Shown piece by piece: positions 2,956 to 64,000 of a stretch of 64,000 nucleotides of DNA. The notes under the pieces were generated by a model that was not told the DNA's origin, did no database searches, and was given only the letters and a program-made list of their open reading frames with translations. The DNA comes from Scyliorhinus canicula (Eukaryota). The stretch lies in NCBI RefSeq assembly GCF_902713615.1, contig NC_052154.1, forward strand, positions 80,765,072-80,829,071, read 5' to 3'. Every line of letters starts with the position of its first letter. Within the stretch, counting starts at the first letter, position 1. Position numbers and translations under genes: made by a program.

Positions 2956-3029
2956 ATGTGCGACTTAGCTGGTCATAGCCGCAACCGGAAGTCCGGGTTC
3001 ATTGTTAACTACATCCTTCTACTACCCCT

Positions 3030-7835: not shown

Positions 7836-9396
7836 GATCCAAATGACCAAATTTCATGAGACAATCCCAATGCTGATCGAAGGTAGAACTGGAGACAGAA
7901 ATAATTTTTGGAGTCTTTGACATGCACTCATACATTGGAGCAGGGAGTTAGCAATTGCATAGCAATTACCCAGTTAATGGGTAATTGACATAGACTGACG
8001 GATTGCCATAAAACCCAAGTGACTAAAGTAATTGTCACAGATTTATGGTTGACATAATCATTGTCGGGATCAGTTAAGTACAGTTTTAGACATTTTGGGA
8101 AAGCTGGTTTTTGTTCGAAAGAGGGAGAGAGAGAGAGACTCAGCAGCAGGCAGCGGTTAAACGTGTCATTAGAGTGAATTAGATGATTCAGCAGTTAAGG
8201 TTGACTTGGAAACTAGGATAGGAATGTTAGAGCTGCGATTTAAAAAAAATATATGTCAAAGATAAGTCGACTAAGTTAAATATCAATGGGTGTCGTTAGT
8301 CGAGATCAGTTTCAAGGAACCAAGAAGACCCCCGCGTCCCAGGATCCACAACAGGACAGTCTGACACATGTTGAACTGATGTATCATGCCACGCCTCTGT
8401 CAATGGAATGTAAGTATCAGTATTTGTTGAATGAACCTTTTTAGTTTGCATTCTAAATCAGTGATTGCCTTTTTTAAAATAATGTTATTCCTCGACAAGA
8501 ATTTTCTTACTCTGACGTTTAGTATGGAGCCAATATCGCAACATGTGGATAATGTGTCAAACTTAGTTGATGACTATTCTCCCCAGTGCAGAGAACTTAG
8601 TTTAATTGTGCTAATAATCTCATTGCTCTCTCGAAAATCTCATTGAGTAAAATAAGCCAAGCCGATACAATACCCTAAGACCATAAGAAAAAGTAGCAGA
8701 GCAGATCATTTGGTCCATCGAGCTTTCCACCATTCAGTTGGATCAGGAGTTCTCAACCTTTTTTAACCCATGGACCCCTTTTCCTCTTAATTTTTTTTGT
8801 GGACCCCCATAGCCATTCCACAGAAAAAAAAGCTTCTTATATGCGTGGTAAACTAATCCTAAAGTCCATCTACCTTACCGTGAGGGTTGGAAACGGATTA
8901 GCGGTATTTTCGTACGTTGCCAAACTTATTCTAATATGAAAAGTAATGAAAAAAACATTTACTGACTAAATTGAATTAAATTACTCTAAAAATAACCAAT
9001 TCATATCAAATATACACAGTTGCTAGTGATTACTGTGTTAAATCATTCATTTTTTTTATATAAATGTTTTTTTATTGAGTTTTCATATTTTATATATGAC
9101 AAATTACAAGTTATTAGAGAGAGAGAAAAAAAAAAGGAAAACACAAAAATTTAACATGAATATTTACAGGTAAGCATCTTCATAACAATAATTGTGGCCG
9201 CCCCCTTTAGCCAGCATACATATTTTACATTCCCCAATATGGCCGAGGCACATGTTTATAGGCATTTATTTATAGTTTGGTTTTGGGCCTTGGCTTGCCA
9301 TCAAACCCCCATACCGAGCCCGTAGCCCCCCCCCCCCTCCCCCCGGCTACCTTCCCCCGATTCCCGCCCATTTTCCCCTGGTTCTTGGCCACCCGA

Positions 9397-28300: not shown

Positions 28301-28420
28301 TTCGCACACCTTTTGACCTCAGAAAGCCCACTATACGGGTGTGGAAGGACGAACAAAATCCACCTTCACTGGGAGCCACCAAATGTTCTACCACTCACTC
28401 CATGGTCGCCACCGGAAGTC
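25380..28420 (-). mobile_element. Degenerate L1 (5' end, ORF1 and EN remnants)
   Basis: 5' terminus GACTTCCGGT at 28420-28411. ORF1 remnants (RIVRMPEDIE) and EN remnants (VLENVYALNW). Confidence 0.85.
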
Positions 28421-28429
28421 CCGAGGGTG

Positions 28430-31000: not shown

Positions 31001-31165
31001 TTATTTGCCATGAACTTACGGTATCTTTACCTGGAACCATGATGCACCATCTCTTTCTCTTGTTCTCAACCTCTCTGTAACCTTTACTAAGGCCAACCGA
31101 ATCAGTTTTCTCCTACACTTCCCCCCTCATTATCCAGCATGCTTTGACTGCAGTTACCTGGCAGG

Positions 31166-31961
31166 TGCCAGGGTCCGAGATGTCTCGGATCGTGGCTTTG
31201 GGATCCTTAACGGGGAGAGGGAGCAGCCCCAAGTCGTGGTCCACATAGGTACCAACGACATAGGAAGGAAAAGGGATAGGGATGTAAGGCAGGAATTCAG
31301 GGAGCTAGGGTGGAAACTTAGATCTAGGACAAACAGAGTTATTATCTCTGGGTTGTTACCCGTGCCACGTGCTGACGAGACGAGGAATAGGGAGAGAGAG
31401 CACATGAACACATGGCTACAGGGATGGTACAGGAAGAAGGGTTTCAGATTCCTGGATAATTGGGGCTCATTCTGGGGTAGGTGGGAACTCTACAAACGGG
31501 ATGGTCCACACCTGGACCAGAGGGGTACTAATGTCCTGGGGGGGGGGGGGGGGGGAGGTTTGCTAATGCTCTTCGGGAGGGTTTAAACTAGTTAAGCAGG
31601 GGATTGGGAACCTGAATTGTAGCTCCAGCATACAGGAGGTTGAGAGTAGTGAGGTCATGAGTAAGGTTTCAAAGTTGCAGGAGTGTACAGACAGGAAGGA
31701 AGATGGTTTAAAGTGCGTCTACTTCAATGCCAGGAGCATCCGGAATAAGGTGGGCGAACGTGCGGCATGGCTTGGTACCTGGGACTTCGATGTTATGGCC
31801 ATTTTGGAGACATGGATAGAGCAGGGACAGGAATGGTTGTTGCAGGTGCCGGGGTTTAGATATTTCAGGAAGCTCAGGGAAGGTGGTAAGAGAGGGGGAG
31901 TAGTGGCATTGTTAGCCAAGGACAGTATTACGGTGGCAGAAAGGACGTTTGATGAGGACTC
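31166..31961 (+). mobile_element. Duplicated 5' piece of the CR1 at 37075 (ORF1 esterase end plus EN start), cut at the duplication junction
   Basis: ORFs 31236-31586 and 31657-32031 match 37145 and 37569 up to the breakpoint. Confidence 0.9.
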
Positions 31962-34900
31962 TTTGATGAGGTCTTTCCCTCCCCTCCTGCTCCTTGTGTG
32001 CCCAAATCAAATTAAACTCCTGCCCAACTAAAGCCTTGAGTGCCTCCCAAAGCATGGCAGCTTTGGCCTCTCCCATGTCATTTAATTTCACATAGCCGCG
32101 AAAGGCAGCCCTTACCCACTCACACACACCCTCATTCACCAACAACCCTACATTCAGCCTCCACTGCGGCCTTGGGCCTCCACCTGAACTATCCACAACT
32201 GCACCCAATGCGGCATGTGATGAGAAAACATAATCGGCAAGTATTCTGAGTCAGCCACCCCTGCCAGCAGCACCTTGTCCATCATGATAAAAATCAATCC
32301 GGGAATACCCCGCTGCATATGGAAGAAGTATAAAATCTCCTTCATCCTCGGCCTGTTAAACCACCACACGTCAGCTCTCCCCATGCGCGCCATGAACCCC
32401 TTCAGCTCTCTCGCTGCTGCCGATACCCTCAATGGCTTCGGACTCGAACGGTCCAGACCCGGGTTCAGACCATACGACAATACCCCAAATAATCAGCCAG
32501 GAATCTGTCCCAACATCCGCCTCAAAATATCCACATCACTCCAGTTCAGGGCATAAACGTTTTCCAGGACTACTGTTATCCCCTCGAGCTTCCCACTGAC
32601 CATCACGTACCTACACCCAGGTTTGGTCACAGCGCTCCCCACCTCGAACATCACACTCTTATTAACCAACACCGCCATCCTGCTCATCTTCATATCCAGC
32701 CCCGAGTGGAACACGTGCTTGCCCGACTCAAACTTCCTCAGGCTCGTAACATCCCCCAAATTCTGCTGCGATCTTGTAAAAACACCACATCCACCTTCAG
32801 GCTCCTCAAATGTGACCGTTTAACCAGCCCATTCAACCCTCACACGTTCTACGTGACCAGACGGCTCAGGGAACTCCTGCACACCTAACCTGCCAATCAG
32901 CCATACCTCTTTTTGAGCCCCCCCCCTCCCGTCACGCGCCTCTCCAGGCCTGCCCTCAGATGTCCGCCTCCATCTCTCCCTTCCCAACTGCACCACACCA
33001 ACCACTCCCATGTCAGCAAACCTCCCCCCTCACCTCCCCCCTCCACCCCCAAATAAAGAACCAACCCCTCCCCACGCCTTCATCCTGGAAACCCCCCACA
33101 TCACTCTCATTTACTAGCCCGCCCAGCTAGCATGGTGGTCCCCACCCAAGGCCTCGAACTTCCACTCACCCCTCCAGCCCACCCCTCCCCCACCCAACCA
33201 CCAAACAAATAAAGAAAACAAATGGCACACTCACCATCGCTGCTCCCTGTCGAAACCCACCACAGACTACCCACCCCATACACTTTACAATTAACACAAA
33301 ATTCCTCTCCAAAGTTCAATGTCCTCATGCTCCTCCCAGTCCACAGTTCCTCATAAAGTTCATCACCTCCTCTGGCGAGTCAAAATCATACTCCTGTTTC
33401 TGATGTGTCACCCAGGAGTGGGCAGGGTATAAAAAAACAAACACCATCATTGTCATAAAGACGGCAGCCTATATCTGGCTGAACCCGGCCCTCTTATTTT
33501 CCAGCTCTGCACCCAATTCCTGGTTGACCCGCAGCTCACTTCCTTCCGAGGTGCATTTCCAGGCCTGTCTCGCCCATTTCAAGATCTTTTCTTTGTCAAA
33601 GAATTGATGCAACCACACCACCTTCGCCCTCAGCGGCTCCCCAACTGCAGCCTCCTGCTGTGCATTGGATCCAATTCAGGGGGTCGGTCGAAGGCCCCAC
33701 TCCCCACAACATCTCCAGCATACTCGCCACATACCTGGTGGCCTCCACTCTCTCAATGTCCTCAGGCATCCTGACAATCCTCATGTTCCCAGATCCTCCA
33801 ATTTCTCTCTCAGTCTTTTCTGGCTGTCCAAAACCAACTCCAACACTGTTTCCAATGAGACCACCTGCTGCTCATGCTCCCCCACTCTCTCCTCCACCTT
33901 CTGAATCGCCAGGCCCTGAGCCTCTCGTCTCTGCTCCACTCTCTCAGTCACAGCTCTGAGCAGCTGCATCATCTTAGCTCTGTTCCAAAGCCTCTCTCCT
34001 CTGTTGCTGGAATTTGCCATTGAAAAACTCCACTAGCTGTTCTGTCGCCTCTGGGTGGACAATGCTGCCCCCTTGCCCTCCGCCATCTTGACATGTGGCG
34101 CACCACAAAACCTTTCCTGTTCCAGCTGCACTCTATTTCTCGTAGCACTTCACATCCTCTGATCCATGCATCAGACTCACCAGAGTAGTATTACCTTCCC
34201 TGGACATTCGCACACCTTTTGACCTCAGAAAGCCCACTATACGGGTGTGGAAGGACGAACAAAATCCACCTTCACTGGGAGCCACCAAATGTTCTACCAC
34301 TCACTCCATGGTCGCCACCGGAAGTCCCGAGGGTGCAGAATTCTTAAACCGCATCCTGAAGATCCACCTTAATTTAAGACAGTAAGGTGCAAACGCCAAA
34401 TAGAAAATGGTAGATTTGGAATTAATTTTATGAAATAAATCGGGCAGGTGAAATGAATGTCAGTGGGTGAAAGGTTTGGCAGTGGTAACCACAATTAGAT
34501 TTGGGTCGTTATGGAAAAGGTGCAAGATCGACCAAGAGTGAAAGCTTCACATCTGGGAAAGGCCCATTTGAAAAAGGTGGACTGGAAACAGCTTACTGAA
34601 TGTAAATAGGTGTTTGAGCTGTAGGATGCATTCACGGAGGAGTTACAAATGATTCAAAACAACTACATTCCCATTAAAAAAATGACTCCCAGATGTAGGT
34701 CTCCCACATCATCCCGTTCTCCCGATGTCAAAGAGCACACAGTGCAGGATAAGGCGAAATAAGTGATGTCACTTATGGAAAGGTCTGTACTGCAGAAAGC
34801 CGGGAAGAGTGTGGATAATGCCTGAGTGAAAGATAAAAGGAAATTAAATAAGTAATAAGAGGGCATGCAAAATATTGACGCGTATTATTTAGGAAACCCG

Positions 34901-37074
34901 AAAAAGGCGTTATGAACACACAGATAACTTCGGAATGAGACAGACAAGAGAACAAAAACAGTGTTGTGGCCGAAGACCAGAACATGAGTCTCAATTAATA
35001 TTTTTCAGTTGTCTTTACAAAAGGTAGGGTTTATATCGACGTGTAGTTAAGGAGGAAGAGTGCGAAATATTGGATGCTATAAGCAGTGTTATCTTTGAAA
35101 GTGGATAGATAGCTAAGCCCGGAAGAAATGTATGCCGGACTGCTCAGAGAATCAAGGTTGGAAATAATGCGAACTCCGGGTATCACCTTCAACTCTATTT
35201 GGTTACAGCCCTGGTGCCAGCGGACTACTAAAATTGTCTCATTGTTTAAAAAGGGGGAAGGATAGAGCTAGTAATTACAGACAAGACAGACTAACCGTGG
35301 CTGGAGTGGGGGGGGGGGGGGGGGGGTAATTTACTGAAAAAAATCTGACAATTGTATAAATCTTCAATAAAAAATGCCCTTAATAATCAATGAGAACCCC
35401 GTGACATACAAAAGGAAGGATGTGCCTGACTAAACTGATTGGTTCTCCTTGCTACCTCCTCAAATAAATCAATGAGGGTGACACGTTTAATCTAGTCGAC
35501 ATGGATTTTAGCAAGGCCTTTGGCAGACTGGTCAGTAAAATAAGAGCCCCTGAGGATCCAAGGGCAAGTAGCAAGTTGGGGCCAAAATTAGATTAGTAGG
35601 AAAGAGTAATTGGTAACAAGTGACTTTTGTGTGTTTTGCAGACGGATTCCACAGGGTCCCTTGCTTTTTGTGGTAAATGTCAATAATCAAGTGTTTTTCA
35701 GGCATGATAATAGGTTTTCCGATTACATAAATAGTTTCTCGTGTTGGTCGCAAGAAAGGGCACTGTAGGCGTCAGGAATATATCAGTGGATTGGTTAGGT
35801 GGGAGAAAGGTCGTATGAGGAACGTTTGAGGACTCTGGGTCTGTACTCGTTGAGTGGACATGGAGAGGATGTTTCCATTTGTAGGAAAAACAAGAAGCAG
35901 AGGACACAATCTCAGGCTAAAGGGACGATCCTTTAAAACAGAGATGAGGGGGAATTTCTTCAGCAGAGGGTGGTGAATCTGTGGAACTATTTGCCGCAGA
36001 AGGCTGTGGAGGCCAATTTACTGAATATCATTAAGACAGAGATAGATAGGTTCTTGATTACTAAGGGGATCAGGGGTTATGGGGAGAAGGCAGGAGAATG
36101 GAGATGGGAAAATATCAGCCATGATTGAATGGCGGAGCAGACTCAATGGGCCAAGTGGCCTAATTCTGCTCCTATGTCTTATATTCTAAAGGTGACAGAT
36201 GGCATTCAGTCTGGAGATATATGCGTTAATGTATTTGGGGAGGGGGAGACAAGGCAAGGGAATACAGAATAAATGATAGGACATTGAGAGGTGTAAACGA
36301 ATAATCGAATGCGTGTCCACGGATTGGTAAAAGTAGCAGGTTGGGTAGATAAAGTAGTTAAGATGTATATGGGATACTTTGCTTTGTTAGGCCAGGAAGC
36401 AAGTACAAGGATAAGGAGGTAATGTTAGAACTGTACTAAACACTAGTTAGGCCTAAGTCAGAGTTCTGGTTAATACATACACCAAGGATGCGATCTAGTA
36501 AAGAAGATGCAGTGGCGATTTACTTAAGTGTTATCAGGAATTGAGAATTTCAACTGTGATGAAAACCAGGCTGGTGTTGGTTTCTTAGTAACGGATGAGA
36601 CTGAGTTACATTTCGATTGATATGTGGAAAATTATGAGGGCTTTTTTCGAATGTATATGAAGGAGCTATTTCCCCGAGCAGATAAGTCAATCAGCACGGT
36701 GCATAGATTCAAAGTATTGGCACTGCTCGAAAAGGCAATACATACAACAAAAAACAATCTCAGTTCAAAAAGCACTTGGATATACATTTAAAACATTGTA
36801 ACCCGCGGGGTTACGGACCAAGAGCTCCAACGTGAGCTTCGGCGTGATGGCTCATTTTCGGACGGCACATATAAATGAATAGCCTTAGTGTGTCTTCGAT
36901 GTTTCATGTTTATTTGCCATGAACTTACGGTATCTTTACCTGGAACCATGATGCACCATCTCTTTCTCTTGTTCTCAACCTCTCTGTAACCTTTACTAAG
37001 GCCAACCGAATCAGTTTTCTCCTACACTTCCCCCCTCATTATCCAGCATGCTTTGACTGCAGTTACCTGGCAGG

Positions 37075-40000
37075 TGCCAGGGTCCGAGATGTCTCGGATC
37101 GTGGCTTTGGGATCCTTAACGGGGAGAGGGAGCAGCCCCAAGTCGTGGTCCACATAGGTACCAACGACATAGGAAGGAAAAGGGATAGGGATGTAAGGCA
37201 GGAATTCAGGGAGCTAGGGTGGAAACTTAGATCTAGGACAAACAGAGTTATTATCTCTGGGTTGTTACCCGTGCCACGTGCTGACGAGACGAGGAATAGG
37301 GAGAGAGAGCACATGAACACATGGCTACAGGGATGGTACAGGAAGAAGGGTTTCAGATTCCTGGATAATTGGGGCTCATTCTGGGGTAGGTGGGAACTCT
37401 ACAAACGGGATGGTCCACACCTGGACCAGAGGGGTACTAATGTCCTGGGGGGGAGGGGGGGGGGGGGAGGTTTGCTAATGCTCTTCGGGAGGGTTTAAAC
37501 TAGTTAAGCAGGGGATTGGGAACCTGAATTGTAGCTCCAGCATACAGGAGGTTGAGAGTAGTGAGGTCATGAGTAAGGTTTCAAAGTTGCAGGAGTGTAC
37601 AGACAGGAAGGAAGATGGTTTAAAGTGCGTCTACTTCAATGCCAGGAGCATCCGGAATAAGGTGGGCGAACGTGCGGCATGGCTTGGTACCTGGGACTTC
37701 GATGTTATGGCCATTTTGGAGACATGGATAGAGCAGGGACAGGAATGGTTGTTGCAGGTGCCGGGGTTTAGATATTTCAGGAAGCTCAGGGAAGGTGGTA
37801 AGAGAGGGGGAGTAGTGGCATTGTTAGCCAAGGACAGTATTACGGTGGCAGAAAGGACGTTTGATGAGGACTCGTCTACTGAGGTAGTATGGGCTGAGGT
37901 TAGAAACAGGAAAGGAGAGGTCACCCTGTTAGGGGTTTTCTATAGGCCTCCGAAAAGTTTCAGAGATGTAGAGGAAAGGATTGCAAAGATGATTCTGGAT
38001 AGGAGCGAAAGTAATAGGGTAGTTGTTAAAGGGGACTTTAACTTTCCAAATGTTGACTGGAAACACTATAGTTCGAGTACTTTAGATGGGTCAGCTTTTA
38101 TCCAATGTGTGCAGGAGGGTTTCCTGACGCAATATGTAGATAGGCCAACGAGAGGCGAGGCCGTATTGGATTTGGTACTGGGTAATGAACGAGGACAGGT
38201 TTTAGATTTGGAGGTAGGTGAGCACTTTGGTGATAGTGACCACAATTCGATTATGTTTACTTTAGTGATGGAAAGGGATAGGTATATACCGCAGGGCAAG
38301 AGTTATATCTTGGGGAAAGGCAATTATGATGCGATGAGGCAAGACTTAGGATGCATCGGATGAAGAGGAACACTGCAGGGGGATGGGCACAATGGAAATG
38401 TGGAGCATGTTCAAGGAACAGCTACTGCGTGTCCTTGATAAGTATGACCTGTCAGGCAGGGAGGAAGTAGTCGAGCAAGGGAACCATGGTTTACTAAAGC
38501 AGTTGAAACACTTGTCAAGAGGAAGAAGGAGGCTTATGTAAAGATGAGATGTGAAGGTTCAGTTAGGGCGCTCGAGAGTTACATGTTAGCTAGGAAGGAT
38601 CTAAAGAGAGAGCTAAGAAGAGCCAGGAGGGGACATGAGAAGTCTTTGGCAGGTAGAATTAAGGATAACCCTAAATCTTTCTATAGATATGTCAGGAATA
38701 AAAGAATGACTAGGGTAAGAGTAGGGCCAGTCAAGGACAGTAGTGGGAAGTTGTGCGTGGAGTCCGAGGAGATAGGAGAGGTGCTAAATGAATACTTTTC
38801 GTCAGTATTCACACAGGAAAAAGACAATGTTGTCGAGGAGAATTGTCGAGGAGAATACTGAGATACAGGCTACTAGACTAGAAGGGCTTGAGGTTCGTAA
38901 GGAGGCGGTGTTAGCGATTCTGGAAAGTGTTAAAGTAGATAAGACCCCTGGGCCGGATGGGATTTATCCTAGGATTCTCTGGGAAGCTAGGGAGGGGATT
39001 GCTGAGCCTTTGGCTTTGATCTTTAAGTCATCTTTGTCTACAGGAATAGTGCCAGAAGACTGGAGGATAGCAAATGTTATCCCCTTGTTCAAGAAGGGGA
39101 GTAGAGACAACCCCGGTAACTATAGACCAGCGAGCCTTACTTCTGTTGTGGGAAAAGTATTGGAAAGGTTTATAAGATATAAGATGTACAATCACCTGGA
39201 AAGGAATAATTTGATTAGAGATAGTCAACATGGTTTTGTGAAGGATAGGTCGTGCCTCACAAACCTTATTGAGTTCTTTGAGAAAGTGACCAAACAGGTG
39301 GATGAGGGTAAAGTAGTTGATGTTGTATATGGATTTCAGTAAAGCGTTTGATAAGGTTCCCCACGGTAGGCTATTGCAGAAAATACGGAGGCATGGGATT
39401 CAGGGTGATTTAGCAGTTTGGATCAGAAATTGGCAAGCTGGAAGAAGACAAAGGGTGTTGGTTGATGGGAAATGTTCAGACTTGAGTCCAGTTACTAGTG
39501 GTGTACCACAAGGATCTGTTTTGGGGCCACTGCTGTTTGTCATTTTTATAAATGACTTGGAGGAGGGCGTAGAAGGTTGGGTGAGTAAATTTGCAGATGC
39601 CACTAAAGTCGGTGGAGTTGTGGACAGTGCAGAAGGATGTTACAAGTTACAGAGGGACATAGATAAGCTGCAGCGCTTGGCTGACAGGTGGAAAATGGAG
39701 TTTAATGCAGAAAAGTGTGAGGTGATTCATTTTGGAAGGAATAGCAGGAAGACAGAGTTCTGGGCTAATGGTAAGATTCTTGTTAGTGTGGATGAGCAGA
39801 GAGATCTCGGTGTCCATGTACATAGATCCCTGAAAGTTGCCATCCAGGTTGAGAGGGTTGTTAAGAAGGTGTATGGCGTGTTAGCTTTTATTGGTAGAGG
39901 AATTGAGTTTCGGAGCCATGAGGTCATGTTGCAGTTGTACAAAACTCTGGTGCGGCCGCATTTGGAGTATTGCATGCAGTTCTGGTTGCTGCATTATAGG

Positions 40001-40681
40001 AAGGATGTGGACGTGGAGAAGGAAGGGGGCTGGTTTAGCTCACCAGACTAAATCGCTGGCTTTTAAAGCAGACCAAGCAGGCCAGCAGCACGGTTCGATT
40101 CCCGTACCAGCCTCCCCGGACAGGCGCCGGAATGTGGCGACTAGGGTCTTTTCACAGTAACTTCATTGAGGCCTACTCGTGACAATAAGCGATTTTCATT
40201 TCATGGAAGCATTGGAAAGGGTGCAGAGAAGATTTACCAGGATGTTGCCTGGTATGGAGGGACGAACTTATGAGGAAAGACTGAGGGACGTAAGGCTGTT
40301 TTCGTTAGAGGGAAGAAGGTTAAGAGGTTACTTAATTGCGGCATACAAGATGATCAAAGGATTAGATAGGGTGGAGAGTGAGAGCCTTTTTCCTCGGATG
40401 GTGATGTCCAGCACGAGGGGACATAGCTTTAAATTGAGGGGAGATAGATATAGGACAGATATCAGAGGTAGGTTCTTTACTCAGAGAGTAGTAAGGGCAT
40501 GTAATGCCCTGCCTGCAACTGCAGTGGACTCGCCAACACGAAGGGCATTCAGATGGTCATTGGATAGACATATGGACGAGAAGGGAATAGTGTAGATGGG
40601 CTTTGGCGTGGTTTCACAGGTCGGCGCAACATCGAGGGCCGAAGGACCTGTACTGCGCTGTAATGTTCTATGTTCTATGTT
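37075..40681 (+). mobile_element. 5'-truncated CR1 LINE: SGNH-esterase ORF1 end plus near-complete, disrupted ORF2 (EN-RT)
   Basis: ORF1 has HIGTND and DGPHL. EN has YFNARSI, GDFNFP and SDHN. RT has DFSKAFDKVPH, VPQGSVLGP and FADAT. (ATGTTCT)n tail. Candidate 8-bp TSD ctggcagg at 37067-37074 and 40682-40689. Confidence 0.95.
40012..40203 (+). mobile_element. tRNA-derived SINE inserted into CR1 ORF2
   Basis: A-box-like ggtttagctca, B box ggttcgattccc, tttca tail. It interrupts the CR1 KDV|EALE sequence with a 4-bp tgga duplication. Confidence 0.85.
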
Positions 40682-40788
40682 CTGGCAGGAAACAATACTG
40701 TTCACTTGTCACGTCTGTCCATGAAAATCAAACCTTCTGCTTACTCTTTTTGTCCGAACAGACGACGCTTAATTTCTGAACCCGTAGT

Positions 40789-40809
40789 CACAGGACGGCA
40801 AACGTCATT
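40789..40809 (+). promoter_or_regulatory. Conserved proximal promoter element with CRE half-site
   Basis: cacaggacggcaaacgtcatt, 19/21 identical to 61205-61225, and at equivalent distance from the leader ATG (114 vs 116 bp). Confidence 0.65.
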
Positions 40810-40902
40810 AGAATCTAACGCGGAAAATAAACCGCAAACTATTCATAAGAGTTGCACAACTGACAGCTAATGTCGAGTCATCAGTTGGATCAGTTGCTAA
40901 GA

Positions 40903-40957
40903 ATGACAGCGAGTATGTTTTTTCTGTGTCTGATCCTCCGAGGGATTATTCACACAG
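40903..40957 (+). CDS. IgSF receptor gene 1, exon 1 (leader)
   Basis: MTASMFFLCLILRGIIHT, phase-1 donor G|gtagc. An in-frame upstream ATG lies at 40870. Similar to the leaders at 61321 and 63058. Confidence 0.8.
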
Positions 40958-41079
40958 GTAGCAGCTCGTTCATTTTCCCAATTTCATGATTTAGCAAACG
41001 TTACTTCCTCTGGATTATGTTTTAATCATCCACCTTCATGCTCATGCGATTAACCAGTATTTGTCTATATTTCTGACAG

Positions 41080-41400
41080 CTGCGGACCGCGTTTCTTTCA
41101 GTGTGTCTCAAGCACCAGAAGAAGTGACTATATCCAGAGGGGGGAACGTCACCTTCTACTGCATATTCCCCATTTTTAAAGAACAATCCTGGGTCCGGAT
41201 ATTATGGTGGAAGCATGGTGAGAATGAATACCTTCGTTCAAGCGCAGACAGGAGAAAACGGTTTGGTCAGGAAGGTAAAGTGAGCGGGTTCTTTCAGTTG
41301 CTGGGCGCGACATTGGGAGACGCTGGAATCTATCACTGCTCTGTGATCCGTCATGGACTACTTGGAAGAAATGGAACCGGATCGCATCTAATTGTGCATG
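41080..41400 (+). CDS. IgSF receptor gene 1, exon 2: germline-joined VJ-type domain (NCR3/NKp30-like)
   Basis: tttctgacag acceptor and G|gtaaat donor, 321 bp, phase 1/1. B-strand TFYC, C-strand LWW, DAGIYHC and J-like GTGSHLIV all in one exon. Confidence 0.93.
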
Positions 41401-41509
41401 GTAAATATCAAATACATTTTTCAGATGTACACGGAATCTTTTGACTGTTTTACCGTACCGATTTTGAATTGCTATTTAAACATACAATGTCAAGCGCATA
41501 GTGCTGCTG

Positions 41510-41642
41510 CCGAAGGTGGGGTTACTGGGTTACGAGGAAAGGGTGGAGCTGTGGCCTTAAATTGAGTGTTCTTTCCGAGGGCCGGTGCAGACTCGATGGG
41601 CCGAATGGCCTCCTTCTGCACTGTAAATTCTATGATTCTATG
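41510..41642 (+). mobile_element. HE1-like SINE 3' fragment in intron 2 of gene 1
   Basis: gggccggtgcagactcgatgggccgaatggcctccttctgcactgtaaattctatgattctatga tail. Confidence 0.75.
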
Positions 41643-42421
41643 AATCAATGAAGGCAATCTGTACGACAATTGAAGGATAGTGGCCACACATAATAGTTGA
41701 CAGCATGCAACTGAATAAAAATCGGTTTATGTTAATACGCATCTTTCAATAAGTACACTATTCATGCTCATTTCAAATTTATTTTCTGCCCCTATCACTG
41801 TCTTGGCGGTTCAATATTCCTGAAGTTAAATCCACACAATGATCTCCTTGCGGGTTTCAATGCCATTGTGCAGCTCAGCGCGAAGGAACGGGTACATTCA
41901 ACAAGCTAAAGTTCGAATCACCTCACTAACCTCCAATTAAAGCAGATCTGTGTTGCTGAAAGCTCCTGAAGTTCAATTGTCAGTAATTTATTTCACTTAT
42001 TTTCATGCTTCACTTGTGGGTTATTCTGGTACTGATGAAGCCCCTCATTTTATCATCAAGAGCGCGTCTATTATTCCTCACTGTCTCTGCGTATCAGGAT
42101 CCGCAAACCACCTTGCTCCCAGGGCACACTTGCTTAATTCTTTGGAGTATGAAAACTAAACACCGATTAATAAATCAGTCCGACTTGCTTGCCGAGAAAT
42201 TCAAAGTCTTGGCGTCAATAGCACAGATAGCATTGACCGCATGTCAAAGCTCATGAGAGATATGGATGAGGTGTGTATAGCATATGTGGAATATTAAAAT
42301 GACAGAAGGCTGAGCTTCTGACTGATGCTATTGTAAGAAAATGGATCGAACGTAAATCAGAATCATGTATTTTTTCCAAATCGCCCAGAATAACTCGACT
42401 TTGTCCATTTGTGTTCCGCAG

Positions 42422-42733
42422 TGGCCCCGACACCATTGAAGCTGGTCTCCAAGACATCTGAATGGGATTCATCTGTGCCTCTGATCCTAGTTTGTGAAAC
42501 AGCTGCGTTTTCCCCGGAAAATTTCACCCTCACTTGGTATAAGAATGGCGTCAAAGCAGCATCCGGAATAATCACCAGAACAGTGCAGAACAGTGAGGGA
42601 CTGTATGAAGTTTGTAGCTCTTTGTCTGAGATGCGGCCTGTCCTGAGCGACGCCAGTTATACATGTTCCGTATCTCATGTCTCCCTCAAGACCCCAGCTA
42701 TTGCCACCCTTAATACTTCTGACTCCAAGCAAG
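42422..42733 (+). CDS. IgSF receptor gene 1, exon 3: C1-set domain
   Basis: ttgtgttccgcag acceptor and G|gtacga donor, 312 bp, phase 1/1. LVCETAAFSPENFTLTWYKNG and YTCSVSHVSL are C1-set motifs (C-x4-F-x-P, W-x-K-N-G, Y-x-C-x-V-x-H). Confidence 0.92.
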
Positions 42734-43419
42734 GTACGACGACAGGAATCCAAAAAATATTGAATTCGTGGAGGGATGTAATGTACAGTTTGCACATATA
42801 AGTAATCGTGGCGCTAGTTCGTGGAAATCCAATGGGAAATATCAACGGAAACATTAGATTTAAATTAATAATATATTTCAACCTAATGTTGTGTAAAACC
42901 GGGTTATGGCAGTCGCCACACAAATATGTTCAGTTAAGCCTTGTCTATTGACAAATTCCTCTCTTACATGTATAAAATATATACAACAGGACATAGGAAA
43001 TAAATGCACGGGTTCGCCATAGGGACTGCTGAACCTGTTTGGTCATCCAGTAAGATCATTATTAACTTTCGAGATCAAATCCACTTTCCAATCCATACCA
43101 ACCGACTGCAGCCTTGAATATGCTCAGAGACTCAGCATTCATAGACCTCTGGGGTAGAGAATTCCTAAGATTCGGACCCCGTGAATGAAAAAATCCCTCC
43201 TGATCTCAGCCTTTTATTGTGACCTTTATCCGCAGTTCTTGACTTGCAGCCAGGAACATCAGTCTTGACGATCCACTTTATGCAAATAAATCCTATGTTG
43301 TCCGTTCTTTATTGTGGAGCTACTCCAAGCACTGTGAGTTTAACGAATAACCTGCCCCATTTACAAAAACAAACTGCAATTTTGCTTAACCTATATCTGT
43401 GCTCATATTAATTTTACAG

Positions 43420-43526
43420 ATTATGTGGGTATGTCCCGTTACTACTCGGGTTTCAGATACACGGTAGGCGGACTGGCGTTTCTACTGCTCCTGATTATCG
43501 CTGGGGCGCGCTACAAGAGCAGATAA
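43420..43526 (+). CDS. IgSF receptor gene 1, exon 4: stalk, transmembrane helix and short tail
   Basis: ttaattttacag acceptor, phase 1 in frame. DYVGMSRYYSGFRYTVGGLAFLLLLIIAGARYKSR*, stop at 43524-43526. Confidence 0.85.
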
Positions 43527-46424
43527 AGAGCGGTAAGATCTGATGTATGCGTTTGATTTTAATTCAAAACATAAGAGAGAGAGAGAGCGTGTGTGTCTCC
43601 CATGAATACAGGGAAAGGGCGGTTCTATTGTAGTCATTGTTTTCTGGTCACAGGTTTCCCCAAACAATTATAAATTATTTATTCAAGACACAATAATTAT
43701 CGTAAAATCATATCACAAATAGATCGGATTAAGTGTGTATCTGCTACTGAAATGTTTCACTTTGCGGCAAGTGCGAAAAGAAATGTGTCCTTCCGCGCAG
43801 TTTTCAATCAGCCTGTTGTGAGACCCCAATTAGTTTGTGTGAAGCCTTATAAAAGCTCAGGCCCGAAATGGTTACAAGTCACTGTTGCTCTCTACGGGGG
43901 CTGCATTTCCAACTTCTGTGGAGAAATCAGATATAGAAATGCATGTTCGATTGCGTGCCTCCGTGAGTAAGGACTTTGCAACAATTGACATTCAAACTAA
44001 GTGAATACTTTAAAAACTCATATCTAAATTGGAGCAATTCATATGAACAACGGCAGCACCTTGAAGGACTGAGACATTCATTCGTGCATCTCGGGAAAAG
44101 TTTGCACTGGGGAAAGAAGTGTTGCCGTAATGAGCAATTATCTATTGATGGGAATATTTGTCCACGAGAAATAAATCACACCGGGAGCTTGGGAATTAAA
44201 CCGTTTTTCCGAAAACAAAATCGGGCGTGTGATAAACTGGTTGCTGATTCGCTCTTGTCATCCACCGCGCTATCGTCGAAGACCAATTCCTCCTCCAGTG
44301 TGTTCGTGCTAAAAATCGATACAGAGCAGAAAACAAAACTGACGGTTTTGTTGAAATCTAGGTAATCATTTGTGTATAGCTTTACCTACATTTGGAAATA
44401 AAAGCCTATCGAATCTGTGTTCTAGCACAGCTGGAACTTGACGAATTTGTGTAACTGTGCTGTAGCGAAGAAATCGACATGTTTAAATATTAGTAACAAT
44501 TGCTACTTGTAATTAACCACCCGTCAGATTTCTATTTACTTAAAATTATTCAGCCTGGTTTCTGCGCCTTCCATCTAGCCATCCTGCCTAGTATTTCAGC
44601 AATAGTATTTAAAATAATTAGGGGCAAAGAAATAGGCACGCAACAATTGTTTGACAATATGTAAGACACAGAGGCTGAAATCGCTAATATGCTGCAGCAC
44701 ATTTAAGCGGAACGATGTAAACTCCATAATTTATACTTGAAACGGAGAGGCCCGGGCACCCCCAGTCGGCGTGGAGAACTGAATCAGCGATCACCACTGG
44801 AGCACTAATATTCAGGTGTTAGCGAACACTAAATAAAAGATTGGCCGTCCGCTAGCATAGAATGTTACAGTGCAAAAATGGCCTTTCGGCCCATCGAGAC
44901 TGATCATACATTGTAACTCCGGTTCTCTGCGGTTTTTTTCCCACCTGAGGAATGCTTTGTGTAGAAGCCAATAAAACTGATAAAATTACCAATTAATAAT
45001 ATTTCTAAACATCAATTTGCAGACCAGCAAGACACCTGCGCGACTCTAGAACTGTCAAGCTCCAAAAAAATGATGAAGAAAATGTAAAATAACAACTGAG
45101 ACCGGAGTAATGCATGACATTATTATCTCATTGAATATATAGTGTAAGTGTTTGGTTTTGCTTAACCATTTGTGGGAATTCCTCTGAATTGCCAATGATA
45201 GAACCTCCTTGTTTACTTTGGCGAATCGGTAATATTTCACGGTCGAATAGGCTATAGATCTCGCTTTTATTAATTAAGCATTCTTATTTTTGTGAGTAAA
45301 ATTGCAGAGCCTGGTCTTTGAAATCCGCCTTGCGTATTCTGACCCCAAGAGCCGATGCTTCTTTAGACAGGGACTCTGCAATCCATGGGCTCATGGGCAA
45401 AAGCCCCTGAACACCGTCATTTAATTGATCAGGAGGTGCATCGCTCTAAATTCCCAAATGACTTTACATTTCCATTCGAAACAATGCGTCCAAAAAATAC
45501 AAATCTCCTGTAAACGGAAGACCTGTGAATTCTGCTTATTGGGGTTTGTCTTCACAACGAACACATTTTAAAGACTTCTCAATAATGATGAATCTTGATA
45601 AATGCTGACGTTATGAAAAATAATTCCTCCAGAGTTGAAGACCTTTTTTTATTAGAGATTAAGTCCTATTTGTACCGTGGCTGCGCCGTGAGATTAAAGA
45701 AAGCTACTAATTATCGTGGTTACATGATGAGTTATTTAGGATGTACCTCACTTGGATTACAGCTTCTCAGCCTTAACACTGAACTTGAAGATGACACACG
45801 ACAAAATGATTCCGCATTCTTCTAACTATTCTGGTTTGATGATTGTGTCCATTAACAAACATTGGGAGCCTTGAATTTTGCAGTATCAGATTCAGGTCGG
45901 ACGTATTAAATAGTCTATACTCTACTCTCAATAGAGGTCACTTAGAGGTCACTTAATTCTGTCTTATTTTCCAAAGAAGTAATTCTTTCTAAAATAATTT
46001 GTGGTTTTCATTCAACAACATTTTGCAGCAAAGACCACCAATTTATTTTTTAGCCAGCTTCTGTGGTAAGAACATCCCCCCCCCCCCCCCCCCCCCCTCA
46101 ATGCACATTTATGTTTTGCGATAACGTTAACGTTCTCCTGGGCGGTGGAAATATTTTGCCGCTTTTCACTTTCTATAACACCCATATGTTTGAAAACCTC
46201 TTGTCTTGGCACTGTTTAATCTTTTTAACACCAATGTGGGAGGGGGCACTGCTCGCAAATAATAACCTTCAATTCTTTGCCAATTATGTGGCTCCTTTTA
46301 ATTTATTCTCGCTATCTTCCACAGTTTGCGCAAGTTCTTACATCTTCTGAATATTACTTCCGTGTTACTGTACGTGATGCTTCTAAATATTAAACGAAGG
46401 TCATTCCTTTGCACTTTTTAAAAG

Positions 46425-61381: not shown

Positions 61382-61573
61382 GTATCTGGATATTCTCTAC
61401 CCTAGATGTCTTATTAAAAAATAAATATTTCGGAGTTCTCACGGCAATTGAACCAAATATAGTTCGTCCGTCAAAATCTCTTTTGCATTTCCATGCATTA
61501 TTATGTTCTAAAGTCTCTAGTTTCGCATTGAATACAATTAATTAATAAAAACCTTAAATATATTTGATAACAG

Positions 61574-61894
61574 GCGCTCCAGCAACTTCGATCAGTGTGT
61601 CTCAAAGTCCCAAACAGGTATCTATATTAAGGGGGACAAACATCACCTTCTACTGCATAATCCCACTTTCTCATGATAATGTCGGTGTCGAAGTGCGTTG
61701 GTGGAAACAAGGTGAGAATAAATACCTCGCAAATGGAGTCGATGGAAGAAAACGATTTGATCTCAAAAGCAAAGGAGGTGGTGTATTTGAGCTGCGAAAC
61801 GCTACTCTCCAGGACTCAGGAACCTATCACTGCGGAGTGATCCGTGACGGAAAATATAGTGGAAATGGGACAGGATCCAGTTTAACTGTTTGGG
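61574..61894 (+). CDS. Cassette 1 germline-joined VJ-type Ig exon (NCR3/NKp30-like)
   Basis: ataacag acceptor and G|gtaagt donor, 321 bp. TFYC, RWW, DSGTYHC and GTGSSLTV. 55/107 identical to the gene 1 V domain without gaps (hand count). Confidence 0.93.
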
Positions 61895-62346
61895 GTAAGT
61901 GAGCGGAATGGCGGGGAACATCAGACACTCTATGGTGTCATGTTCTTTTGTACCGCATTTGATGTTATAAAACATGGTGCACAACGTCAAGTTATGCAGC
62001 AGAACGTGATATTTAATTCGCTGTGTTATTCCAAACTGCTGGAAATACTGAGCAATTCAGGGAATGTCTGTGGAGAGGGAGACAATGTTAAAGCCTCAGG
62101 CCTGTGACCTTTTCAGTGGTATATTACCGAATTCATTCAAAAGGCAATGTTTACATTAGATTTAATAGTTTGTGGGTGCTCCACCATAGATACCCCAGCC
62201 AGAGGAACCAACCTCGCCGTGTCTACCCTGGCAATCTTGTACATTCCAAAGAAATCACACCTCCGATTCTTCGAAATTCCTCACTCTCCACTTGTGGAAG
62301 CTTCCAGAAATTACTATAACTTTGCTCTTCTTATCAGTAAAAAGTC

Positions 62347-63118: not shown

Positions 63119-63310
63119 GTATCTGGATATTCTCTACCCTAGATGTCTTATTAAAAAATAAATATTTCGGAGTTCTCACGGCAATTGAACCAAATATAGT
63201 TCGTCCGTCAAAATCTCTTTTGCATTTCCATGCATTATTATGTTCTAAAGTCTCTAGTTTCTCATTGAATACAATTAATTAATAAAAACCTTAAATATAT
63301 TTGATAACAG

Positions 63311-63631
63311 GCGCTCCAGCAACTTCGATCAGCGTGTCTCAAAGTCCCAAACAGGTATCTATATTAAGGGGGACAAACATCACCTTCTACTGCATAATCC
63401 CACTTTCTCATGATAATGTCGGGGTCGAAGTGCGTTGGTGGAAACAAGGTGAGAATAAATATCTCGCAAATGGAGTCGATGGAAGAAAACGATTTGATCT
63501 CAAAAGCAAAGGAGGTGGTTTATTTGAGCTGCGAAACGCTACTCTCCAGGACTCAGGAACCTATCACTGCGGAGTGATCCGTGACGGAAAATATAGTGGA
63601 AATGGGACAGGATCCAGTTTAACTGTTTGGG
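63311..63631 (+). CDS. Cassette 2 germline-joined VJ-type Ig exon
   Basis: Differs from cassette 1 by 3 synonymous changes and one V>L change. Splice sites intact. Confidence 0.93.
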
Positions 63632-64000
63632 GTAAGTGAGCGGAATGGCGGGGAACATCAGACACTCTATGGTGTCATGTTCTTTTGTACCGCATTTGAT
63701 GTTATAAAACATGGTGCACAACGTCAAGTTATGCAGCAGAACGTGATATTTAATTCGCTGTGTTATTCCAAACTGCTGGAAATACTGAGCAATTCAGGGA
63801 ATGTCTGTGGAGAGGGAGACAATGTTAAAGCCTCAGGCCTGTGACCTTTTCAGTGGTATATTACCGAATTCATTCAAAAGGCAATGTTTACATCAGATTT
63901 AATAGTTTGTGGGTGCTCCACCATAGACACCCCAGCCAGAGGAACCAACCTCGCCGTGTCTACCCTGGCAATCTTGTACATTCCAAAGAAATCACACCTC

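What the first reader, a model, noticed from the sequence alone, without database searches (positions are those of the whole stretch)
40903..43526. Complete non-rearranging VJ-C1-TM receptor: a germline 'TCR-like chain'
Seen: four in-frame exons with phase-1 junctions encode a protein of about 265 aa: leader, a V domain whose J-like G strand (GTGSHLIV) is in the same exon with no RSS, a C1-set domain, and a TM. Established: C1-set domains are largely restricted to Ig, TCR, MHC, beta2m, tapasin and SIRP-type proteins. Mammalian NKp30/NCR3 has a germline VJ domain but no C domain, and shark NCR3-family genes are a divergent MHC-linked family. Inference: an NCR3-like V fused to C1 has the architecture proposed for the pre-RAG antigen-receptor ancestor. 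Whether this gene is already described cannot be determined here.
Basis: partly seen in the sequence, partly recalled or inferred. Interest (0 to 1): 0.85.

Follow-up and report, generated by a model that had tools for sequence, protein, structure and literature searches.

The report
Tail-less shark VJ-C1 immune receptor gene
This is a real, transcribed catshark gene for a small antibody-like surface receptor whose variable domain is ready-made in the germline. It is one tail-less copy in a large shark, ray and chimaera family of paired inhibitory and tail-less receptors, and RefSeq already annotates it automatically.

Summary
Window 40903-43526 (+) carries leader, VJ, C1-set and TM exons, all phase 1 with AG/GT sites, giving 264 aa. 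Pfam calls V-set and C1-set (6.4e-11). RNA contigs from four runs join V to C1 to TM. Two corrections: the TM exon runs to 43532 (stop 43524-26) and splices to a 3'UTR exon at 45023, and no RNA contig covers the leader.

The genome is Scyliorhinus canicula. RefSeq already models the gene (XP_038661932.1, "SIRP-alpha-like") with an N-terminus taken from 8286-8409.

The gene is not unique. It belongs to a family of VJ-C1-TM receptors found only in cartilaginous fish. Most members have ITIM tails, some are tail-less, and C1-skipping isoforms are predicted. This scan has already noted many such genes on other DNA of this genome.

This copy has a six-residue tail and an Arg in the outer TM. Its nearest relatives carry ITIMs, so it is probably an activating or decoy derivative of an inhibitory receptor.

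It is not on the MHC chromosome. Specific kinship with NKp30 is not shown.

Verdict: a new member of a known kind, of moderate interest.

The parts
40789..40809 (+). Conserved promoter-proximal block CACAGGAyGkCAAACGTCATT, which contains an ACGTCA core, about 95 bp upstream of the ATG
   Evidence: Nearly invariant (19 of 21 positions, the two variable ones written y and k) in the alignment with the two paralogous leader-VJ cassettes at about 61.2 and 62.9 kb, although the flanks have diverged. Promoter function is inferred, not tested.
40903..40957 (+). Leader exon (18 codons + 1 nt, split leader), encoding MTASMFFLCLILRGIIHT
   Evidence: ATG and GT donor. Closely similar to the N-termini of orthologue proteins in Heptranchias (MSASMVFLCLTLRGIIYTAAD) and Heterodontus (MSASMICLCLTLRGIIHAAA). 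Aligns with the paralogue leaders. Not covered by any RNA contig in X1-X5, and there were no reads in X7.
41080..41400 (+). VJ exon: V-set domain with the J-like G strand NGTGSHLIV in the same exon
   Evidence: Pfam V-set 27.9 bits. Cys-Trp-DxGxYxC-GxG hallmarks are conserved across 28 family members. AF2 V model has pLDDT 88. No RSS heptamer. RNA contigs cover it fully.
42422..42733 (+). C1-set constant-domain exon
   Evidence: Pfam C1-set E 6.4e-11. The family profile hits Ig heavy-chain constant domains and UrIg2 at up to 2.5e-37. FYPE...WYKNG...YTCxVSH signature. Seven-strand A-G topology in the AF2 model. Joined to the V and TM exons in RNA contigs.
43420..43532 (+). Connecting peptide, TM and 6-residue tail. 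Stop TAA at 43524-43526; the exon ends 6 nt later at a GT donor
   Evidence: Sequence. Joint 43529/32>45022/23 in X3 and X4. The two letters 'AC' that the tool placed between the sides are read here as a G43530A allele plus the true junction 43532|45023 (inference). The TM has Arg (FRYTVGG) at a column where ITIM-bearing relatives have Gly, Val or Ile, and Tyr where most relatives have a juxtamembrane Cys.
45023..45254 (+). Start of the 3'UTR exon, which continues beyond 45254
   Evidence: X3 and X4 contigs run from exon 4 into 45022-45254 and on. The reading frame after the stop closes again after 9 codons. There is no homology to relatives' cytoplasmic tails.
39740..39770 (+). 3' end of an alternative 5' exon inside a sense-oriented LINE reverse-transcriptase ORF. 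A cryptic GT donor at 39771 is spliced to the V exon
   Evidence: The X3 contig (depth 74) carries 84 nt upstream of 41080. Its last 30 nt match 39740-39769 exactly. The ORF 39317-40048 is RVT_1, E 1.4e-19.
8286..8409 (+). First coding exon of the RefSeq model XP_038661932.1. It has no signal peptide and is probably a cytoplasmic-tail exon of an upstream relic paralogue joined by read-through
   Evidence: tblastn of P0001 residues 1-41 gives 100% identity. GT donor. The gene span of 35,241 bp matches 8286-43526. The 'relic' reading is inference, helped by scan note s1-249271.

Best explanation
The locus is a genuine, spliced and transcribed Scyliorhinus canicula gene. It encodes a type I membrane glycoprotein of 264 aa: split leader, germline-joined VJ domain, one C1-set domain, a TM segment and a six-residue tail.

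It belongs to a large multigene family found only in sharks, rays and chimaeras. Typical members carry one to several ITIM or ITSM-like tyrosine motifs. Tail-less members arise repeatedly in the same clades. This is the pattern of paired innate immune receptors such as SIRP-alpha/beta, KIR and LILR.

This copy most likely descends from an ITIM-bearing ancestor. A stop codon six nucleotides before the TM-exon donor removed the tail and left the downstream exon as 3'UTR. It also carries an Arg in the outer part of the TM helix.

Shown: gene structure, domain types, splicing, family membership, the tail-less state, and location off the MHC chromosome.

Inferred: the V domain binds a germline-specified ligand. 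The protein either signals through an ITAM adaptor recruited by the TM Arg (activating partner of its inhibitory neighbours) or acts as a non-signalling decoy.
For: Gene structure and domains.

Splicing of V-C1-TM-3'UTR in RNA contigs of four runs from three studies.

Identity with RefSeq XP_038661932.1 of S. canicula.

Family: 67 representative proteins match the V exon at E<=1e-10. All those examined that also have the C1 domain are chondrichthyan. ITIM motifs occur in most tails.

Tree: ITIM-bearing and short-tailed members are intermixed. This gene sits in a 99/93-supported clade with Mustelus (ITIM), Heterodontus (ITIM and short) and Stegostoma (no TM modelled) proteins. Heptranchias (ITIM) proteins come next and the ray clade (ITIM and short) after that.

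TM Arg: it is shared with the short-tailed ray relatives P0004 and P0141, and is seen in only 1 of about 17 ITIM-bearing members aligned.

Signs of constraint: the leader closely matches orthologue leaders. A promoter block is conserved with paralogues. Exon SNP density is 0.54% against 1.6% in intron and flank in the same run (Fisher p=0.026). Within the coding sequence there are two synonymous changes and one K>R change.

Structure: the whole V-C1 model superposes best as a rigid body on SIRP-beta1 and SIRP-alpha D1-D2 (rmsd about 4 A over about 220 residues, TM 0.65).

Precedent for activating receptors arising from inhibitory ones: PMC2213150 (title and abstract as listed).
Against: No RNA contig covers the leader exon. 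The only 5' exons seen (a LINE RT-derived exon, and RefSeq's exon 32 kb upstream) encode no signal peptide, so a productive mRNA has not been demonstrated.

The leader donor GTAGCA is weak by my own reading; no splice-site scoring was run.

The Arg lies only about two residues before the hydrophobic core, so membrane burial is uncertain.

The juxtamembrane Cys conserved in most relatives is Tyr here. An extra Cys appears in C1 strand E.

The gene has the longest branch in its clade (0.31).

The S. torazame counterpart is modelled only as a V exon fused to another gene.

No ligand, adaptor or cell type is known.
Confidence: 0.6

Rival explanations
1. A decaying copy, a pseudogene in the making. 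The V, C1 and TM exons are still open, but the gene has lost its signalling tail and its own promoter activity. It appears in RNA only because read-through or LINE-driven transcripts from upstream splice into the first available acceptor, that of the V exon.
For: The leader exon is absent from all RNA contigs, while exon 2 reaches depth 74 in X3. The dominant X3 contig starts in a LINE RT ORF. RefSeq's model starts 32 kb upstream in what looks like a relic tail exon. The stop lies immediately before a still-used donor. The conserved juxtamembrane Cys is lost, an odd Cys is gained, and the branch is the longest in the clade. A LINE insertion ends about 100-200 bp upstream of the conserved promoter block.
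Against: All four coding exons are intact, with every canonical Ig residue and the N-glycosylation sites. Exon diversity is a third of intron diversity. The leader and promoter block are conserved. Tail-less members with the same Arg exist in rays, so a short tail is a recurrent family state and not by itself decay. Contigs show presence, not absence, and a first exon cannot be picked up by read-through splicing.
Confidence: 0.3
2. A member of the shark NCR3 (NKp30) family that keeps a C1 domain. On this view it is a direct relative of mammalian NKp30, which would then have lost the C1.
For: NKp30 of macaque, rat and human are among the 30 closest Swiss-Prot structures to the V model (TM 0.75-0.77, rmsd about 3.2 A, 20-22% identity). 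Like NKp30, the protein has a germline VJ domain, a short tail and an Arg at the outer TM boundary. Sharks have a divergent multigene NCR3 family; I know this only from the title of Kinlein et al. 2021 (seen) and from memory of its abstract. C1-skipping V-TM isoforms are predicted in this family.
Against: Ig kappa V, CD79b, TCR alpha V and CD8 beta score equally well. Human NKp30 chains are not among the 60 best PDB sequence matches of the V exon, where PD-L1 V leads. None of the names read (about 100 proteins) is 'natural cytotoxicity triggering receptor 3-like'; the names are SIRP-, tapasin-related-, B7H6-, IgL- or TCR-beta-like. The loci that Verissimo et al. label NCR3 lie in the MHC (white shark chr19; catshark chr13 at 30.4 Mb), whereas this gene is on another chromosome.
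Confidence: 0.25
3. One reading: a relic 'germline TCR-like chain', a direct descendant of the pre-RAG antigen-receptor ancestor that pairs with a partner chain through V-V and C1-C1 contacts.
For: VJ + C1 + TM is the architecture of an antigen-receptor chain. Ig light chains are the best PDB structural matches (Foldseek E 3.5e-16; VIA Z 15.9). The leader is split as in antigen-receptor genes (PMC12227049).
Against: The light-chain superpositions have rmsd about 9 A, so the two domains match separately rather than as one rigid unit. Most family members carry ITIM tails. This copy has no interchain Cys. By my own reading of the sequence, and not by any run comparison, the WYQQ-type Gln of the V-V interface is absent (WWKHG). 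The published candidates UrIg and UrIg2 have the linkage that this gene lacks (PMC12227049).
Confidence: 0.07

Closest known systems
SIRP family (SIRP-alpha, -beta, -gamma)
   Same: Germline V domain with a J-like G strand followed by C1-set domain(s) and a TM. The family is paired: ITIM-bearing members alongside tail-less members with a basic TM residue. It gives the best rigid-body structural match (rmsd 3.9-4.1 A). SIRP-alpha D2 is among the best PDB sequence matches of the C1 exon. RefSeq names the gene SIRP-alpha-like.
   Different: One C1 domain instead of two. Identity is only 20-23%. RefSeq names across the family are inconsistent, so orthology is not indicated. No synteny evidence was obtained.
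NKp30 / NCR3 and the shark NCR3 family
   Same: Non-rearranging VJ domain, short tail and Arg at the outer TM boundary. NKp30 is among the closest V structures. Sharks have many divergent NCR3-type genes.
   Different: NKp30 has no C domain and is MHC-linked. This gene has a C1 and lies on a non-MHC chromosome. Sequence similarity to human NKp30 is not above that to other V domains. The key paper (Kinlein 2021) could not be read, so overlap with its eight subtypes is unknown.
UrIg / UrIg2 (non-rearranging shark antigen-receptor-like genes)
   Same: Single-exon VJ with split leader, C1-type constant domains, found only in cartilaginous fish. UrIg2 (PDB 9dmx) is the second-best PDB match of the C1 exon and of the family C1 profile.
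   Different: UrIg has three C domains and is secreted. UrIg2 has nine or more C domains. Both are linked to the MHC or to the Ig/TCR complex, and neither is described with ITIM tails (PMC12227049). This gene has one C1 and belongs to a large family with ITIM tails, on another chromosome.
PRARP (non-rearranging VJ-type genes of chicken and other non-mammals)
   Same: A non-rearranging gene with a VJ domain, discussed as a remnant of the antigen-receptor precursor (cited in PMC10751288).
   Different: Not compared here because no PRARP sequence was available from the tools. No bony-vertebrate protein appeared among the V+C1 hits examined. PRARP's domain make-up and tail are known to me only from memory.
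Activating KIR and Ly49 derived from inhibitory homologues
   Same: The proposed origin: loss of the ITIM tail combined with a basic TM residue, recurring within clades of inhibitory receptors (PMC2213150; tree).
   Different: An unrelated ectodomain type. Here the adaptor and ligand are unknown and the activating function is only inferred.
Ig light chain / TCR chain
   Same: The V + C1 two-domain ectodomain; best PDB matches by Foldseek and VIA-align.
   Different: No V/J split, no RSS and no interchain Cys. Superposition needs each domain fitted separately (rmsd about 9 A).

Membership tests
Non-rearranging VJ-C1 IgSF receptors (the kind that includes SIRP and UrIg) | V domain and J-like G strand (GxGxxLxV) encoded in one exon, with no RSS | tested here: met
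   The ORF is continuous through NGTGSHLIV in exon 41080-41400. There is no CACAGTG/CACTGTG heptamer in or beside that exon. RNA contigs are colinear with the genome.
Non-rearranging VJ-C1 IgSF receptors (the kind that includes SIRP and UrIg) | Membrane-proximal domain of the C1 set | tested here: met
   Pfam C1-set 42.9 bits against C2-set_2 18.2 bits. The family profile matches Ig constant domains and UrIg2. The AF2 model has seven strands A-G.
Chondrichthyan VJ-C1 family with ITIM-bearing and tail-less members (unnamed; RefSeq 'SIRP-alpha-like', 'tapasin-related-like' and others) | V and C1 both align with family members, and the gene clusters within the family tree | tested here: met
   60-63% identity over the V-C1-TM part to Mustelus, Heterodontus and Heptranchias proteins. 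Sits in a 99/93-supported clade. The leader closely matches orthologue leaders.
Chondrichthyan VJ-C1 family with ITIM-bearing and tail-less members (unnamed; RefSeq 'SIRP-alpha-like', 'tapasin-related-like' and others) | Cytoplasmic ITIM or ITSM-like motifs (inhibitory subtype) | tested here: not met
   The tail is ARYKSR followed by a stop. No tail homology was found downstream. The gene therefore belongs to the tail-less subtype.
SIRP family (orthology) | V-C1-C1 ectodomain | tested here: not met
   There is only one C1 exon between the V and TM exons, and RNA contigs join them directly.
SIRP family (orthology) | Conserved synteny or a phylogenetic grouping with tetrapod SIRPs | not tested
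   No tetrapod SIRP sequences or flanking-gene data were available from the tools. Only structural similarity was obtained.
NKp30 / NCR3 | Single VJ domain without a C domain | tested here: not met
   A C1 exon is present and retained in transcripts.
NKp30 / NCR3 | Location in the MHC (class III region) | tested here: not met
   The gene lies on a 198,790,641-bp chromosome. The catshark MHC chromosome 13 has its last gene at 163.4 Mb, and its NCR3-labelled locus is at 30.4 Mb.
NKp30 / NCR3 | V domain specifically closest to NKp30 | tested here: inconclusive
   NKp30 entries rank 4, 9, 13 and 18 in the structural search, but level with Ig kappa V, CD79b and TCR alpha V. NKp30 is not in the top 60 PDB sequence matches.
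UrIg / UrIg2 | VJ followed by three or more C1 domains, with linkage to the MHC or to the Ig/TCR complex | tested here: not met
   There is one C1. The chromosome is larger than chr13, so it is not chr13, and by size not chr16 or chr17 either.
Rearranging antigen receptor chain (Ig/TCR) | Separate V and J segments with RSS | tested here: not met

The most novel reading that the evidence does not exclude
The gene is one visible piece of a family that may not yet be described as such: germline VJ-C1 paired receptors (ITIM-bearing, tail-less with a TM Arg, and C1-skipping isoforms), present across Chondrichthyes and located outside the MHC and the Ig/TCR complex. On this reading the family would be the cartilaginous-fish counterpart of KIR, LILR and SIRP-type receptors. 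It would also be an independent set of surviving single-exon VJ + C1 + TM genes for reconstructing the receptor that the RAG transposon invaded. This tail-less copy would be an activating partner that signals through an ITAM adaptor.
Probability: 0.3. Interest if true: 0.7.

Novelty: new member of a known kind. Interest (0 to 1): 0.4.

Why it matters
Single-exon VJ genes joined to C1 domains are what immunologists look for when reconstructing the receptor invaded by the RAG transposon (PMC12227049). Innate paired receptors of sharks are also poorly catalogued.

For this gene the work gives three practical results. The RefSeq N-terminus is probably wrong. The gene is the tail-less type. It sits in a cluster with ITIM-bearing neighbours.

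The family matters more than this copy. It spans sharks, rays and chimaeras, lies off the MHC, carries a mix of unrelated automatic names, and has ITIM-bearing and tail-less members side by side. That makes it a concrete set of candidates for shark NK-cell or myeloid receptors.

It does not displace UrIg and UrIg2 as the best candidates for the ancestor, because it lacks their linkage to the MHC or the Ig/TCR complex.

Tried and rejected
(1) The full 264-aa protein could not be submitted as one reference. Exons were searched separately, and RefSeq protein P0001 residues 43-287 stood in for the mature protein.

(2) PDB profile searches with the V alignment were dominated by multi-Ig proteins such as titin, Robo and pIgR, because per-domain scores add up. 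They were not useful for finding the nearest V family.

(3) Five key papers are not held and could not be read: Kinlein 2021 on the shark NCR3 family (by DOI and by PMC8273117), PMC3709836 (listed as Flajnik et al. 2012, B7 family and NKp30), PMC10530332 (UrIg, J Immunol 2023) and PMC4594805 (listed as Ohta and Flajnik 2015).

(4) tblastn of relatives' cytoplasmic tails against the window found no relic ITIM exons downstream. The only hit is weak, at 44707-44805 (E 0.48), and is not claimed.

(5) Raw-read run X7 gave no reads on the 5' region, so it is not a test.

(6) MHC linkage is rejected on chromosome length. Membership of an MHC paralogous chromosome (4, 16, 17, 21, 25) is judged unlikely only from size order and gene-ID range, and is not proven.

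(7) An RSS was looked for and not found.

(8) I considered whether the in-frame LINE-RT-to-V junction is meaningful. I rejected it as a chance 1-in-3 phase match with no signal peptide.
Full report
**What is there.** The exons are 40903-40957, 41080-41400, 42422-42733 and 43420-43526. Each internal boundary is AG/GT and every junction is phase 1. Pfam scores exon 2 as V-set (27.9 bits, cutoff 26). It scores exon 3 as C1-set (42.9 bits, E 6.4e-11), against 18.2 bits for C2-set_2 and no I-set hit. The C1 exon alone matches Ig heavy-chain constant domains, shark UrIg2 (PDB 9dmx) and SIRP-alpha/gamma D2 in the PDB. A profile of 28 family C1 domains matches more than 10,000 distinct PDB sequences, led by Ig constant domains and UrIg2. 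An AlphaFold2 model of residues V to tail (pLDDT 84.6) shows a V domain, a seven-strand C1 domain and a TM helix. No RSS heptamer lies in or beside the V exon.

**Transcription and splicing.** Five runs labelled with the same organism (two marked 'RNA?', three of unrecorded kind) hold 10-37% of the locus's sampled words, about the exon share. Their contigs, laid on 40300-45300, carry the joints 41400>42422 (X1, X3, X4) and 42733>43420 (X1-X4), both GT..AG. No joint that skips the C1 exon was listed.

- **A further 3' exon.** X3 and X4 contigs continue from the TM exon to 45022/23. From the sequence, the TM exon ends at 43532 (donor GT at 43533), six nucleotides after the TAA, and the next exon begins at 45023 after a CAG acceptor. 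I read the two 'extra' letters reported by the tool as a G43530A allele. So the stop sits just upstream of a donor that is still used, and the downstream exon is 3'UTR. Read past the stop, the frame closes again after nine codons.
- **No RNA over the leader.** No contig covers the leader exon. The X3 contig (depth 74) instead carries 84 nt whose last 30 match 39740-39769 exactly, and these are followed in the genome by G|GTAAG. This lies inside a sense-oriented LINE reverse-transcriptase ORF (RVT_1, E 1.4e-19, with the endonuclease domain upstream).

**Which genome, and what is annotated.** A full HMMER scan with the V exon returned a 100% match, P0001. P0001 is RefSeq XP_038661932.1 of Scyliorhinus canicula, named 'tyrosine-protein phosphatase non-receptor type substrate 1-like' (SIRP-alpha-like), on a 198,790,641-bp chromosome. 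Its first 41 residues come from window 8286-8408 and contain no signal peptide. The RefSeq gene spans 35,241 bp, which is exactly 8286-43526.

It also aligns with the leaders of two paralogous cassettes in the same window, together with a nearly invariant upstream block CACAGGAyGkCAAACGTCATT. I conclude that 40903-40957 is the authentic first coding exon. The RefSeq and LINE 5' exons are best explained by read-through transcripts. Such transcripts can only splice into the V exon, because a first exon has no acceptor. Whether the native promoter is active in any tissue remains open.

**The family.**
- **Size and range.** The V exon finds 67 cluster representatives at E<=1e-10. All of those looked up that also have the C1 domain are from cartilaginous fish: Scyliorhinus, Mustelus, Heterodontus, Heptranchias, Chiloscyllium, Hemiscyllium, Stegostoma, Cetorhinus, Hypanus, Hemitrygon, Mobula, Narcine, Pristis, Amblyraja and Callorhinchus. 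The non-chondrichthyan hits that were checked lack the C1 and are generic Ig matches.
- **Names.** RefSeq names for the family are inconsistent: SIRP-alpha-like, SIRP-beta1-like, tapasin-related-like, CD276 homolog, B7H6-like, Ig lambda-like, TCR-beta-like, MHC class II-like and PD-L1-like. The automatic pipeline evidently has no orthologue to name them after.
- **Tails and isoforms.** Most members with a TM have tails carrying one to four (S/I/V/L)xYxx(I/V/L) motifs. Others have short tails. Several genes also have predicted V-TM isoforms that skip C1, for example catshark LOC119970986 X1/X2 and Heterodontus XP_067905922-25.
- **Conserved residues.** The family alignment shows the V hallmarks and a typical C1 signature, FYPE...LTWYKNG...GLYEVSSSL...YTCxVSH.
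- **Earlier notes of this scan.** They list many similar VJ-C1-TM-ITIM genes on other pieces of this genome, and relatives immediately up- and downstream of this window. These notes are unchecked leads, but they agree with the database picture.

**Where this copy sits.** In a maximum-likelihood tree of 92 V-C1 ectodomains, ITIM-bearing and short-tailed members are intermixed throughout. This gene lies in a 99/93-supported clade with Mustelus P0002 (ITIM), Heterodontus P0137 (ITIM) and P0139 (short), and two Stegostoma proteins with no TM modelled. Heptranchias ITIM forms come next, and a ray clade containing both ITIM (P0140) and short-tailed (P0004, P0141) forms comes after that. Parsimony therefore suggests an ITIM-bearing ancestor.

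The TM alignment shows three things:
- This protein, P0004 and P0141 share an Arg at a column where ITIM-bearing members have Gly, Val or Ile. Only 1 of about 17 ITIM-bearing members has the Arg.
- The Cys that follows that column in most members is Tyr here.
- The tail is six residues long.

The AF2 helix (model residues 216-244) includes the Arg. These features match the usual anatomy of activating or decoy partners in paired receptor families. Recurrent origin of such partners from inhibitory homologues is documented for KIR and Ly49 (PMC2213150).

**Functional or decaying?**
- **For function.** All exons are open and every canonical residue is present. Four N-glycosylation sites are present. 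V-C1-TM splicing is correct in several runs. The leader and a promoter block are conserved. In run X3 there are 4 differences in 746 exon bases against 34 in 2134 intron and flank bases (p=0.026). Within the coding sequence these are two synonymous changes and one K>R.
- **Against function.** There is no RNA evidence for the leader. The 5' exons that are seen are non-productive. The leader donor GTAGCA is weak by my reading of the sequence. The juxtamembrane Cys is lost and an unpaired Cys is gained in C1 strand E. The branch is the longest in the clade. The S. torazame counterpart is modelled as a chimera.
- **Weighting.** I put about 0.6 on a working tail-less receptor and about 0.3 on a decaying copy.

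**Comparison with known families.**
- **Whole ectodomain.** It matches V-C1 proteins of many families at similar Foldseek E-values: PD-L1, B7H6, SIRP, TAPBPL, CD276, butyrophilins, TCR beta and Ig light chains. The tightest rigid superpositions are on SIRP-beta1 and SIRP-alpha D1-D2, at rmsd 3.9-4.1 A. In the PDB, Ig light chains lead (E 3.5e-16, Z 15.9), but at rmsd about 9 A, so the two domains match separately.
- **V domain alone.** The V model (pLDDT 88) is closest to Ig kappa V, CD79b, NKp30 (ranks 4, 9, 13, 18), TCR alpha V and CD8 beta, all near E 1e-6. By sequence against the PDB, PD-L1 V leads and NKp30 is not in the top 60. 'NCR3-like V' is therefore possible but not specific.
- **Linkage.** Verissimo et al. 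place the catshark MHC on chr13. The last gene in their table ends at 163.4 Mb, and one locus labelled NCR3 is at 30.4 Mb. This gene is on a 198.79-Mb chromosome, so it is not MHC-linked in this assembly. Their MHC-paralogous chromosomes are 4, 16, 17, 21 and 25. From size order and gene-ID range (LOC119970986 on this chromosome, against 1199754xx-1199770xx on chr13), this chromosome is probably one of about 8 to 10. That is an inference.
- **UrIg and UrIg2.** These are the published non-rearranging shark antigen-receptor-like genes. They differ in having three or more C domains and in their linkage to the MHC or to the Ig/TCR complex (PMC12227049).

**Verdict.** The sequence observation is right and now has RNA support. 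The gene is real and already present in RefSeq, with a doubtful 5' end. It is a tail-less member of a large family of germline VJ-C1 receptors, found only in cartilaginous fish, that behaves like an innate paired-receptor family. It is not a unique TCR-like relic. I could not determine whether the family as a whole equals the 'shark NCR3 family' of Kinlein et al. 2021, because that paper is not held. If it does not, the family itself would deserve description.

Noticed in passing
window 61558-61899 and 63295-63636 (+), with leaders near 61321 and 63058: Two nearly identical leader + VJ-exon cassettes about 1737 bp apart. Their V domains are about 51% identical to this gene's V. They probably belong to the next family gene, whose later exons lie beyond the window end.
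   Followed up: partly
window 26064-37749: Direct tandem duplication with a period of about 5.9 kb (spacings 5906-5912). The sampled 300-nt blocks are 100% identical. It includes LINE fragments. It is either a very recent duplication or an assembly artefact.
   Followed up: partly
window 37479-40592 (+): A sense-oriented LINE (endonuclease plus RVT_1 ORFs, interrupted) ends a few hundred bp upstream of the gene's promoter block. A cryptic donor at 39770|GT inside its RT ORF is spliced to the V exon, by chance in frame (phase 1).
   Followed up: yes
window 8286-8409 (+): The exon that RefSeq uses as the gene's first coding exon encodes ...THVELMYHATPLSME. This resembles a degenerate ITIM-type cytoplasmic exon of the family. 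A scan note reports a relic VJ-C1 gene 19 kb before the window start.
   Followed up: partly
window 40300-40800 and 41469-41802: High-copy interspersed repeats, one of them inside intron 2. Summed contig depth in the same runs reaches 1e4 to 5e5, far above the gene's depth of 3-78.
   Followed up: no
window 1-4000, 12000-16000, 26000-28000, 32000-34000: GC-rich blocks (52-57% GC) with strong negative GC skew (-0.4 to -0.45), unlike the rest of the window. They look like satellite or strand-biased repeats.
   Followed up: no
window 44707-44805 (+): A weak tblastn match (33% identity, E 0.48) to the membrane-proximal cytoplasmic segment of a Heptranchias relative, in the intron between the TM exon and the 3'UTR exon. 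It may be a relic of a lost tail exon, or chance.
   Followed up: partly
window 46076-46097: A run of about 22 C within or near the 3'UTR exon.
   Followed up: no
P0135 (S. torazame RefSeq protein, 413 aa): This model fuses a V domain 83% identical to this gene's V onto a second, different V-C1-TM. It is probably a chimeric prediction across two neighbouring family genes.
   Followed up: partly
window 9400-11722 (-): A second LINE-type element on the minus strand (RVT_1, E 7e-44, and a zf-RVT match).
   Followed up: partly
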